Positions 10,593 to 10,906 of a DNA stretch of 64,000 bases are shown in pieces; the stretch's first letter is position 1, and every line of letters begins with the position of its first letter. The position numbers were made by a program, and so were the translations under genes. The DNA lies in IMG/VR virus record IMGVR_UViG_3300047548_001236, positions 62,001 to 126,000 of that record; one strand, given 5' to 3'. The notes beneath the pieces are model-generated. The model was not told where the DNA came from. It did not search any database and saw only the letters and a list, made by a program, of their open reading frames with translations.

Positions 10593-10598
10593 AATATA

Positions 10599-10662
10599 TT
10601 CCTTTCAGGTTAGTTTTTGGTTTGTTTTACAATAAACATTAGGTTCTGCTGAACCTAACCTT
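10599..10662 (-). promoter_or_regulatory. structured 5' leader of DUF2828 gene
   Basis: AGGTTAG/CTAACCT stem abutting the SD; alternative hairpin TTAGGTTC-AGCA-GAACCTAA. Confidence 0.6.
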
Positions 10663-10672
10663 TGGATCTTTG

Positions 10673-10906
10673 TTAGAGGATCATATGCCTTTTTCTAGCA
10701 TTTGTCAACGGTTTATTTGGTAGGTTATCCAATAAAGTTATATAACCTACAGTCTTGTGAATTAAGAACTTATCATAGAGTTCAGCAGCTAGCTTACTTT
10801 CTTTTTTCTGATAGAATAAAGGATCTTCCTGTTTTGATTTTGCTATATCAGCATGAATCAACTTCAATATGAAATCACATTCTTCTAATGATAAATTCAT
10901 TATCAC
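10673..10906 (-). CDS. hypothetical protein
   Basis: 77-aa ORF with GGAG RBS. Confidence 0.45.
   Translation of the reverse strand: MIMNLSLEECDFILKLIHADIAKSKQEDPLFYQKKESKLAAELYDKFLIHKTVGYITLLDNLPNKPLTNARKRHMIL
10680..10708 (-). promoter_or_regulatory. sigma70-type promoter for DUF2828 gene
   Basis: TTGACA-N17-TATGAT. Confidence 0.8.

What the first reader, a model, noticed from the sequence alone, without database searches (positions are those of the whole stretch)
10593..10708. DUF2828 mRNA leader can switch between two folds next to its SD
Seen: after the TTGACA-N17-TATGAT promoter the leader can form either the local 8-bp hairpin TTAGGTTC-AGCA-GAACCTAA or the long-range AGGTTAG/CTAACCT stem. 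The latter displays the conserved module and ends directly at GAAAGGA. The gene is visibly more GC-rich than its flanks. Inference: autogenous translational control titrated by the tRNA-like RNAs.
Basis: partly seen in the sequence, partly recalled or inferred. Interest (0 to 1): 0.6.

Follow-up and report, generated by a model that had tools for sequence, protein, structure and literature searches.

The report
Mini Y-RNA in Ro-like gene leader

Summary

- **Single-sequence folding** is not significant (z = -1.5). The case rests on comparison with relatives.
- **Long-range stem.** Stem AGGTTAG/CTAACCT, a CNGCA motif 3 nt inside it and an unpaired G after it occur upstream of DUF2828 genes in 81 of 88 loci. 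The stem covaries. A model built from it gave 124 of 124 hits on the gene strand.
- **RNA-side test.** Of viral stretches picked by the 5' half alone, 76 of 77 with a DUF2828 gene carry the complementary 3' strand. Only 3 of 41 without the gene do.
- **The protein.** It folds like Ro60 (Foldseek E about 1e-9), so the element reads as a Y-RNA-like partner. Larger relatives hold T- and D-arms inside the same stem.
- **Local hairpin.** It is specific to the window's subclade but real: 144 of 144 cells pair, with a G-C/A-U swap that arose at least twice.
- **Mutual exclusivity** of the two folds is plausible but unproven, because the covarying hairpin pairs lie outside the long stem.
- **Shared module.** The two tRNA-like RNAs upstream carry it with identical spacing (AGGNU-N5-CNGCA).
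- **Autogenous control** remains inference.

Rfam 15 has no matching family. Verdict: partly supported; a new variant of a known kind.

The parts
10680..10708 (-). Sigma-70-like promoter: TTGACA, 17-nt spacer, TATGAT. Predicted transcript start near 10673.
   Evidence: 11 of 12, the best match in the region. The hexamers are kept while the spacer has diverged in relatives L151, L152 and L160. Promoter use is inferred; no RNA data were found.
10664..10666 (-). UCC, two bases upstream of the long stem. It can pair with GGA of the SD once the stem has formed.
   Evidence: Present in the stem-enforced folds. The C at 10664 is invariant in 18 subclade leaders. Absent from the wider family. Inferred, weak.
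10655..10661 (-). P1 5' strand, AGGTTAG.
   Evidence: family covariation; invariant in the subclade.
10647..10651 (-). Conserved module CAGCA (family consensus C-A/C-G-C-A-A), 3 nt after P1.
   Evidence: CAGCAA 45, CCGCAA 10, others 21. C, G and C are invariant in the subclade.
10639..10658 (-). Local hairpin: 8-bp stem with tetraloop AGCA. Its first four bases (TTAG) are shared with P1.
   Evidence: All 144 cells pair; there is a G-C/A-U swap with at least two origins.
10614..10638 (-). A-rich linker. Its first five bases (10638-10634) complete the invariant CTAATGTTTA (10642-10633), whose TGTT can extend the local hairpin.
   Evidence: No change at all between 10599 and 10663 in a relative about 96% identical.
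10607..10613 (-). P1 3' strand, CTAACCT.
10606..10606 (-). Unpaired G that always follows P1.
   Evidence: 79 of 79. Invariant.
10600..10605 (-). Shine-Dalgarno AAAGGA, 7 nt before the ATG.
9132..10592 (-). Gene for a 486-aa DUF2828 + DUF7788 (vWA) protein with a Ro60-like fold.
   Evidence: Pfam; phrog_850, 'RNA-binding protein'; AlphaFold2 pLDDT 83.6; Foldseek best matches are Ro60 and Rsr structures, E 6e-10 to 8e-08, including a Thermus phage Ro60.
10917..11040 (-). tRNA-like RNA 2: acceptor stem, T-arm, encoded ACCA, and an inner hairpin followed by TGGAT-N5-CCGCAA.
   Evidence: Missed by ARAGORN and Rfam.
11046..11170 (-). tRNA-like RNA 1: acceptor stem, T-arm, encoded ACCA, and AGGTT-N5-CAGCAA.
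6844..6912 (-). Second copy of the P1 + CAGCAA motif, directly after a TTGACG-N17-TATAAA promoter at the head of the tRNA cluster.
   Evidence: (30.3 bits, E 1e-06).
5005..5111 (-). Weaker copy of the motif, enclosing D-arm-like and T-arm-like sequences, downstream of the tRNA cluster.
   Evidence: (11.7 bits, E 0.16). Tentative.

Best explanation
The 5' untranslated region of the phage's Ro60-like (DUF2828) gene is a minimal Y-RNA-like element.

Anatomy:
- A 7-bp closing stem (P1) pairs the start of the transcript with the bases just before the ribosome-binding site.
- P1 presents a CNGCA motif 3 nt inside the loop.
- A conserved unpaired G follows it.

Proposed mechanism:
- The module is the binding site of the Ro60-like protein. 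It recurs in the phage's tRNA-like and Y-like RNAs.
- In the mRNA, P1 ends 4 nt before the AGGA of the SD. Bound protein would keep the 30S subunit off and hold down its own synthesis.
- Free Y-like RNAs compete for the protein and relieve the block.
- In the window's subclade an inner hairpin can extend over the 5' strand of P1. That gives an alternative, unbound fold.

Shown: the two helices, the family, its link to the gene, and the protein's fold.
Inferred: binding, repression, titration and the switch.
For: 1. **Conservation.** P1 plus the module lies within 45 nt of the start codon in 81 of 88 DUF2828 loci, against 57 of 747 control segments.
2. **Covariation.** Four of the 7 pairs have double changes; the score is 0.42 against 0.10 in shuffles (0 of 500 reach it); slid controls score 0.04 or less. 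RNAalifold predicts P1 alone.
3. **Strand.** All 124 model hits are on the gene strand.
4. **Unbiased test.** Among stretches chosen by the 5' half only, the 3' strand is present in 76 of 77 with the gene and 3 of 41 without. All 79 are followed by G.
5. **Protein.** The fold matches Ro60, full length. Known Ro60 proteins bind Y RNAs encoded beside them (PMC4201824, PMC12135203).
6. **Homology to Y-like RNAs.** Relatives carry T-arm and D-arm in permuted, YrlA-like order inside the same P1.
7. **Shared module.** The spacing AGGNU-N5-CNGCA recurs in the tRNA-like RNAs, whose helix also covaries.
8. **Tight spacing.** The P1 end lies 11-17 nt from the start in 33 of 66 distinct leaders and 18-30 nt in 29.
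9. **Purifying selection.** There is no change in 10599-10663 in a relative about 96% identical that differs at 30 of 742 positions.
Against: - There is no binding, expression or end-mapping data, and no RNA run holds the sequence.
- Copies of the motif sit away from any SD: after tRNAs, before tRNAs, downstream of the gene. The primary role is therefore probably in trans.
- Half of the leaders have a 10-25 nt spacer between P1 and the SD.
- In Mycobacterium phage Bromden and Ralstonia phage RSP15 the motif copies found lie downstream of the gene. Felix O1, S13 and Aeh1 gave no convincing copy next to the gene. The arrangement is not universal.
- Tight spacing could simply reflect compact phage genomes.
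- The motif differs from the Ro-binding CGAA motif of known Y RNAs.
- In the tRNA-like RNAs the GCA of the module may pair with a downstream UGC, so the mimicry may be imperfect.
- Predicted P1 stability across the family is very uneven.
Confidence: 0.45

Rival explanations
1. Co-transcribed Y-like small RNA without translational control. The element works only in trans as an RNA partner of the Ro-like protein. It is made from the same transcript as the gene and perhaps cut off after the conserved G. Its closeness to the SD reflects genome compaction.
For: - Bacterial Y RNAs lie upstream of rsr and are processed from one precursor (PMC4201824). The phiLo Yrl1 and Yrl2 RNAs lie upstream of the phage Ro60 gene (PMC12135203).
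- Many loci have tandem copies, and copies not next to an SD.
- In many relatives a tRNA-like RNA with a CCA end sits 5-15 nt before P1 with no promoter between them, which implies processing of a polycistronic RNA.
Against: - In this subclade the element has lost everything but P1 and a hairpin, yet stays invariant and glued to the SD.
- P1-to-start distances form two narrow classes rather than a broad spread.
Confidence: 0.3
2. The motif belongs to another factor of the tRNA island, for example a processing signal for RNase P, Z or E, or a site for the CCA-adding enzyme or PP-loop ATPase encoded nearby. The DUF2828 gene is only a syntenic neighbour.
For: - The motif sits in tRNA clusters and next to tRNA-like RNAs.
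- A CCA-adding enzyme and a PP-loop ATPase are encoded within 4 kb.
Against: - The link to DUF2828 is far tighter than to tRNAs. In 72 of 77 stretches that hold the gene (76 of them with the complete motif) it starts 71-169 nt before the gene.
- The protein has the fold of a known Y-RNA binder.
Confidence: 0.1
3. The local hairpin is a weak intrinsic terminator or attenuator, or a 5' stabilising stem-loop. The long-range pairing has no role in this subclade.
For: - The simple scan lists the hairpin as terminator-like: 9 pairs, 3 of them G-C, tail GTTTATTGTA.
- The hairpin covaries and the TGTTTA after it is conserved in 17 of 18 leaders.
Against: - The stem is AU-rich and the U-run is interrupted.
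- L159/L005 keep the hairpin but lack the U-run.
- The hairpin lies about 15 nt after the promoter.
- The distal CTAACCTG is invariant while its neighbours vary.
- The region scores 53 bits against the family model through P1.
Confidence: 0.07
4. A protein-independent RNA switch: temperature, a small ligand, or an uncharged tRNA or tRNA-like RNA pairing directly with the leader.
For: - The two folds are nearly isoenergetic.
- Both partner strands are conserved.
Against: - There is no conserved ligand pocket; the region between the strands is an A-rich linker that varies in length.
- No complementarity to the tRNA-like RNAs was noticed beyond the shared module (not searched systematically).
- The alternative hairpin is absent from the wider family.
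Confidence: 0.05

Closest known systems
Bacterial and phage Y RNAs (YrlA, YrlB, Yrn1, phiLo Yrl1/Yrl2) with Ro60/Rsr
   Same: - Encoded beside a ring-plus-vWA Ro60-like protein, on the same strand.
- A stem made of the 5' and 3' ends closes a large loop that carries a short conserved motif.
- Larger relatives hold T- and D-arms in permuted order.
- Several copies per locus.
   Different: - By sequence the protein is DUF2828/DUF7788, not TROVE.
- The motif is CNGCAA, 3 nt after the stem, not GNCGAA/CGAA.
- There is no Rfam match.
- The window's copy has no tRNA-like domain and is part of an mRNA leader abutting the SD.
Autogenous translational operators (ribosomal-protein leaders; phage T4 gp32, gp43 and RegA; MS2 coat protein). 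Named from general knowledge, not tested here.
   Same: A copy of the protein's natural RNA ligand sits at or next to the SD of its own mRNA, so that excess protein would block initiation and free ligand would relieve it.
   Different: Nothing of the kind is reported for Ro60 in the papers read. Binding and repression are untested here. Half of the family has a spacer between the site and the SD.
Bas63 gp130, a Ro60-like protein of a Felix O1-like coliphage (bioRxiv 10.1101/2024.10.10.617714)
   Same: - A Ro60-like phage protein directly beside tRNA genes.
- The authors suggest that some of the 'tRNAs' are Y RNAs.
- It was reported to counter the ppl defence system.
   Different: - No RNA motif and no leader element are described there.
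- I did not verify that gp130 is a DUF2828 protein. Felix O1-like phages do hit the window's protein at about 40% identity.

Membership tests
Y RNA / YrlA-like RNA | Encoded next to a Ro60 orthologue, on the same strand. | tested here: met
   The protein's fold matches Ro60/Rsr. All 124 motif hits are on the gene strand. In 72 of 77 cases the motif lies directly upstream.
Y RNA / YrlA-like RNA | A stem formed by the 5' and 3' ends closes a large loop. | tested here: met
   P1 covaries. The predicted transcript start lies about 12 nt before P1.
Y RNA / YrlA-like RNA | The Ro-binding motif GNCGAA(N)G / CGAA (PMC4201824, PMC12135203). | tested here: not met
   The conserved motif is C-A/C-G-C-A-A.
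Y RNA / YrlA-like RNA | A tRNA-like domain (T-arm and D-arm). | tested here: not met
   Absent from the window's leader. Present inside the same P1 in L092, L104, L040/41/43 and Bromden.
Y RNA / YrlA-like RNA | A match to a curated covariance model. | tested here: not met
   Rfam 15 finds only tRNAs, in the window and in 10 related loci.
Y RNA / YrlA-like RNA | Bound by the Ro60-like protein. | not testable with these tools
   Needs EMSA, CLIP or RIP.
Autogenous translational operator | Binding site at or next to the SD or start codon. | tested here: met
   P1 ends at 10607 and the AGGA of the SD starts at 10603. In 33 of 66 leaders P1 ends 17 nt or less from the start.
Autogenous translational operator | The site resembles the protein's main RNA ligand. 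| tested here: inconclusive
   The module and its spacing are shared with the tRNA-like RNAs. Its partner strand lies on the other side, and the ligand itself is unproven.
Autogenous translational operator | The protein represses its own translation. | not testable with these tools
   Needs reporter fusions or toeprinting.
RNA conformational switch | Two conserved, mutually exclusive structures. | tested here: inconclusive
   Both helices are supported. The covarying hairpin pairs do not overlap P1. Exclusivity rests on the invariant TTAG/CTAA plus TGTT. The energies are -14.8 and -13.9 kcal/mol.
Intrinsic terminator | A GC-rich stem followed by an uninterrupted U-run, conserved. | tested here: not met
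   Three G-C pairs, an interrupted U-run, and no U-run at all in L159/L005.
TROVE domain protein (Pfam) | A match to the TROVE profile. | tested here: not met
   Pfam gives DUF7788, DUF2828 and a weak VWA_2 only. The likeness to Ro60 is structural.

The most novel reading that the evidence does not exclude
DUF2828 proteins, found in more than 700 phage records, are a second branch of Ro60-like proteins. They have their own undescribed class of Y-like RNAs, defined by a 7-bp AGGNU/ANCCU stem, CNGCAA and a trailing G. In many phages a stripped-down copy of that RNA, built into the protein's own mRNA next to the SD, serves as an operator. The protein's level would then be set by competition between its mRNA and its Y-like and tRNA-like partners. 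In the window's lineage a conformational switch would add to this.
Probability: 0.3. Interest if true: 0.8.

Novelty: new variant of a known kind. Interest (0 to 1): 0.62.

Why it matters
Ro60 and its Y RNAs have been studied for decades, yet how cells or phages balance the protein against its RNAs is unclear.

- A well-defined, covarying RNA motif is tied to a large phage family of Ro60-like proteins. The family includes culturable models: KVP40, Campylobacter phage NCTC12673 and Listeria P100-like phages. Felix O1-like phages and mycobacteriophages carry the protein too; in Bromden the motif copies lie downstream of the gene, and in Felix O1 none was convincing.
- The motif gives a concrete binding site to test, and a natural minimal version of about 55 nt.
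- It offers a simple, falsifiable model of feedback by RNA mimicry.
- It would explain 'odd tRNAs' and unannotated gaps in phage tRNA islands.
- It may bear on how such proteins counter host defence, as reported for Bas63 gp130.

Tried and rejected
- **blastn of the leader against the phage collection:** no match. Relatives had to be found through the protein.
- **Rfam**, at gathering and at E up to 10: nothing but tRNAs and chance hits.
- **Full-text search for 'DUF2828':** only unrelated plant and tardigrade papers. Two further searches gave nothing on this motif. The supplements of PMC4201824 are not held, and PMC10870794 is not held.
- **Pattern scan for the P1 3' strand plus SD:** no new subclade members, only chance matches before unrelated genes.
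- **Phage K abundant lncRNA next to a tRNA** (PMC9241854): no match to the model. Unrelated.
- **Sequencing runs:** no RNA run was found. Contigs only showed variation and the absence of the small ORF in a relative.
- **A short second helix (GUU/AAC) around CAGCA in the whole family:** pairing is inconsistent in A5. Rejected.
- **Thermodynamic dominance of P1:** mean pair probability ranges from 0 to 1, median 0.52. Uninformative for these AU-rich RNAs.
- **A loose regular expression for the module in the window:** mostly chance hits in coding sequence. Only 11121, 10990, 10661 and 6910 are credible.
- **Caveat on A5:** its rows were chosen by a finder that demanded pairing, so its '100% paired' is circular. 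Searches are the unbiased controls.

Full report
**Setting**

The window is part of a 282,855-bp freshwater phage record. The finding lies on the minus strand. A 486-aa gene (10592-9132) carries Pfam DUF2828 and DUF7788 (a vWA domain) and PHROG 850, 'RNA-binding protein'. It sits in a tRNA island: 13 tRNA genes at 5262-6676, a CCA-adding enzyme and a PP-loop ATPase upstream, and a homing-endonuclease-like ORF downstream on the other strand.

**The observation**

- -35 TTGACA 10708-10703, a 17-nt spacer, -10 TATGAT 10685-10680.
- Hairpin TTAGGTTC / AGCA / GAACCTAA at 10658-10639.
- AGGTTAG 10661-10655, complementary to CTAACCT 10613-10607.
- Then G, AAAGGA, and ATG at 10592.

The gene is 54.7% GC against 37-43% in its flanks. 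Relatives show the same contrast, so it is a family trait and no sign of recent transfer.

Taken alone, the leader does not fold better than shuffles (z = -1.5). The hairpin fold (-14.8 kcal/mol) and the long-stem fold (-13.9) are nearly isoenergetic, with an intermediate in which the 5' strand is shared between the two partners.

**The long stem belongs to a large RNA family**

I fetched DUF2828 loci through the protein.
- In 81 of 88 loci a perfect 7-bp stem lies within 45 nt of the start codon, and CNGCA follows its 5' strand by about 3 nt (2-4 allowed). The same finder succeeds in 57 of 747 random segments of those loci.
- The outer five pairs are mostly AGGTT/AACCT, with the variants AGGAT/ATCCT, AGTTT/AAACT, AGATT/AATCT and GGGTT/AACCC. 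The inner two pairs change freely.
- On 33 aligned sequences, four of the seven pairs show double changes. The covariation score is 0.42 against 0.10 in shuffles, and 0.04 or less when the partner is slid. RNAalifold predicts this stem and nothing else.
- Those rows were picked for pairing, so I ran a test from the RNA side. Of 118 viral stretches holding only the 5' half (a 16-mer), 76 of 77 with a DUF2828 homologue have the exact complementary strand 20-200 nt downstream, against 3 of 41 without. All 79 are followed by G. All 77 lie on the gene's strand, and 72 start 71-169 nt before the gene.
- A covariance model of the motif gave 124 hits at E of 0.01 or less in 80 loci, every one on the gene strand and often several per locus.
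- The motif recurs, with other stem sequences, in Campylobacter phage NCTC12673 and Listeria phage LP-083-2 (upstream of the gene) and in Mycobacterium phage Bromden and Ralstonia phage RSP15 (downstream of it).
- Rfam 15 has no family for it.

**What the family is**

The AlphaFold2 model of the protein (pLDDT 83.6) matches Ro60 structures over its full length: Xenopus and human Ro60, Deinococcus Rsr and the Thermus phage phiLo Ro60, at E 6e-10 to 8e-08 and TM 0.5-0.6 apart from one human Ro60 entry at 0.38. It has no TROVE profile match.

Ro60 proteins bind Y RNAs encoded beside them. Those RNAs have a closing stem and a short motif in a large loop, and bacterial ones hold a tRNA-like domain (PMC4201824, PMC12135203).

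In several relatives the same stem encloses a T-arm, or a T-arm, a stem-loop and a D-arm in the permuted YrlA order (L040/41/43, L092, L104, Bromden). The window's leader is therefore the smallest member of a Y-like RNA family. The motif (CNGCAA) differs from the CGAA of known Y RNAs.

The phage's own genome holds more copies:
- 6912-6844, behind a promoter at the head of the tRNA cluster.
- Two copies outside the window.
- A weak one at 5111-5005 with D- and T-arm-like sequences.

**The 'conserved module' and the tRNA-like RNAs**

Two RNAs at 11170-11046 and 11040-10917 have an acceptor stem, a T-arm and an encoded ACCA. ARAGORN and Rfam miss them.

They carry AGGTT-N5-CAGCAA and TGGAT-N5-CCGCAA. 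That is the same spacing as AGGTT-N5-CAGCA in the leader. Their counterparts in about ten relatives and in phage S13 do the same.

In these RNAs the partner of the AGGNU strand lies upstream, across a short 3-5 nt loop (often a tetraloop), and it covaries (AGGATT/AATCCT, TGGAT/ATCCA, AGTTTC/GAGACT). Its GCA may pair with a downstream UGC in the tRNA-like RNAs.

**The local hairpin**

It is absent from the wider family but present in all 18 distinct leaders of the window's subclade, which I chose by protein similarity alone.
- All 144 cells pair. One pair is G-C in nine sequences and A-U in nine; two others alternate U-A and U-G.
- On the protein tree the G-C/A-U state needs about four changes, and well-supported branches force at least two.
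- The loop varies (AGCA, CGCA, GGCA, AGCC, AGC, CGCAT, AGCT), with C, G and C fixed.
- P1 is invariant in the subclade.
- A relative about 96% identical that differs at 30 of 742 positions has no change between 10599 and 10663.

**Are the folds exclusive?**

The covarying hairpin pairs lie outside P1, so P1 stacked on a 4-bp inner hairpin satisfies all the covariation. Only invariance argues for competition. The proximal CTAA, and the TGTT after it that can extend the hairpin over the whole 5' strand of P1, are fixed while the linker beyond them varies. A switch is plausible but unproven.

In either fold the SD's GG is predicted to be weakly paired, with UCC 10666-10664 or with the CCU of the free 3' strand. 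These 3-bp helices carry little weight.

**Mechanism**

I think it most likely that the module is the protein's binding site, and that in the leader the bound protein hinders the 30S subunit. P1 ends 4 nt before AGGA. The P1-to-start distance is 11-17 nt in 33 of 66 distinct leaders and 18-30 nt in 29.

The main rival is a co-transcribed Y-like RNA with no effect on translation, as at bacterial rsr loci. Copies away from any SD, tandem arrays, and tRNA-like RNAs abutting P1 without a promoter all fit it.

No RNA data could be found.

**Novelty**

Ro60-like phage proteins and Y-like RNAs are known, and a preprint guesses that 'tRNAs' beside a Ro60-like coliphage protein are Y RNAs (10.1101/2024.10.10.617714). 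Neither this motif, nor its tie to DUF2828 proteins, nor its place in the leader appears in Rfam 15 or in the papers I could search. That library is incomplete.

Noticed in passing
window 11046-11170 and 10917-11040, minus strand: Two tandem tRNA-like RNAs with acceptor stem, T-arm and encoded ACCA. ARAGORN and Rfam (even at E up to 10) do not call them. Homologues lie directly before the leader in many relatives.
   Followed up: partly
window 10673-10900, minus strand: A 75-aa ORF with no family match, together with the promoter, separates tRNA-like RNA 2 from the leader. One relative's contig skips 10667-10922, and several loci lack the ORF or carry a different small ORF there.
   Followed up: partly
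window 6844-6912 and 6702-6733, minus strand: A second motif copy lies right after a TTGACG-N17-TATAAA promoter. A possible 20-codon ORF and a strong terminator-like hairpin (14 pairs plus a T-run) follow it, just before the 13-tRNA cluster.
   Followed up: no
window 5262-6676, minus strand: The tRNA cluster holds near-duplicate sets: Ile-GAT, Tyr-GTA, Phe-GAA and Cys-GCA twice each, plus Lys and Glu pairs with different anticodons. This suggests a tandem duplication of a block.
   Followed up: no
window 8445-9149, plus strand: A homing-endonuclease-like ORF (PHROGs 314 and 655) converges on the 3' end of the DUF2828 gene, overlapping its last codons.
   Followed up: no
window 9132-10592, and loci L002, L008, L040, L092: DUF2828 genes are 5-17 GC points richer than their surroundings in most relatives checked, so the contrast is a family trait.
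   Followed up: partly
L048, L067, L070, L102 (last 45 nt before the start codon): After a large Y-like element, a miniature hairpin of the form AGGNNN-loop-NNNCCTG, without CAGCAA, sits between it and the SD.
   Followed up: no
L035 3357-3599 (Cronobacter phage S13): Features annotated 'tRNA-Ser' (121 nt) and 'tRNA-OTHER' (113 nt) are tRNA-like RNAs with a long insert. The insert carries a hairpin plus AGTTT-N5-CAGCA, the same module.
   Followed up: partly
L147 2950-3300 (Mycobacterium phage Bromden): Three motif copies lie downstream of the 'Ro-like RNA binding protein' gene in an unannotated gap. The middle one encloses a T-arm and a D-arm in permuted order.
   Followed up: partly
L119, L120, L127, L129 and similar loci: The string AAACTAACCTGAAAGGAG also precedes an unrelated small gene in a group of near-identical viral contigs. 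There is no AGGTTAG partner in the 110 nt upstream that I read, so I took it as chance.
   Followed up: no
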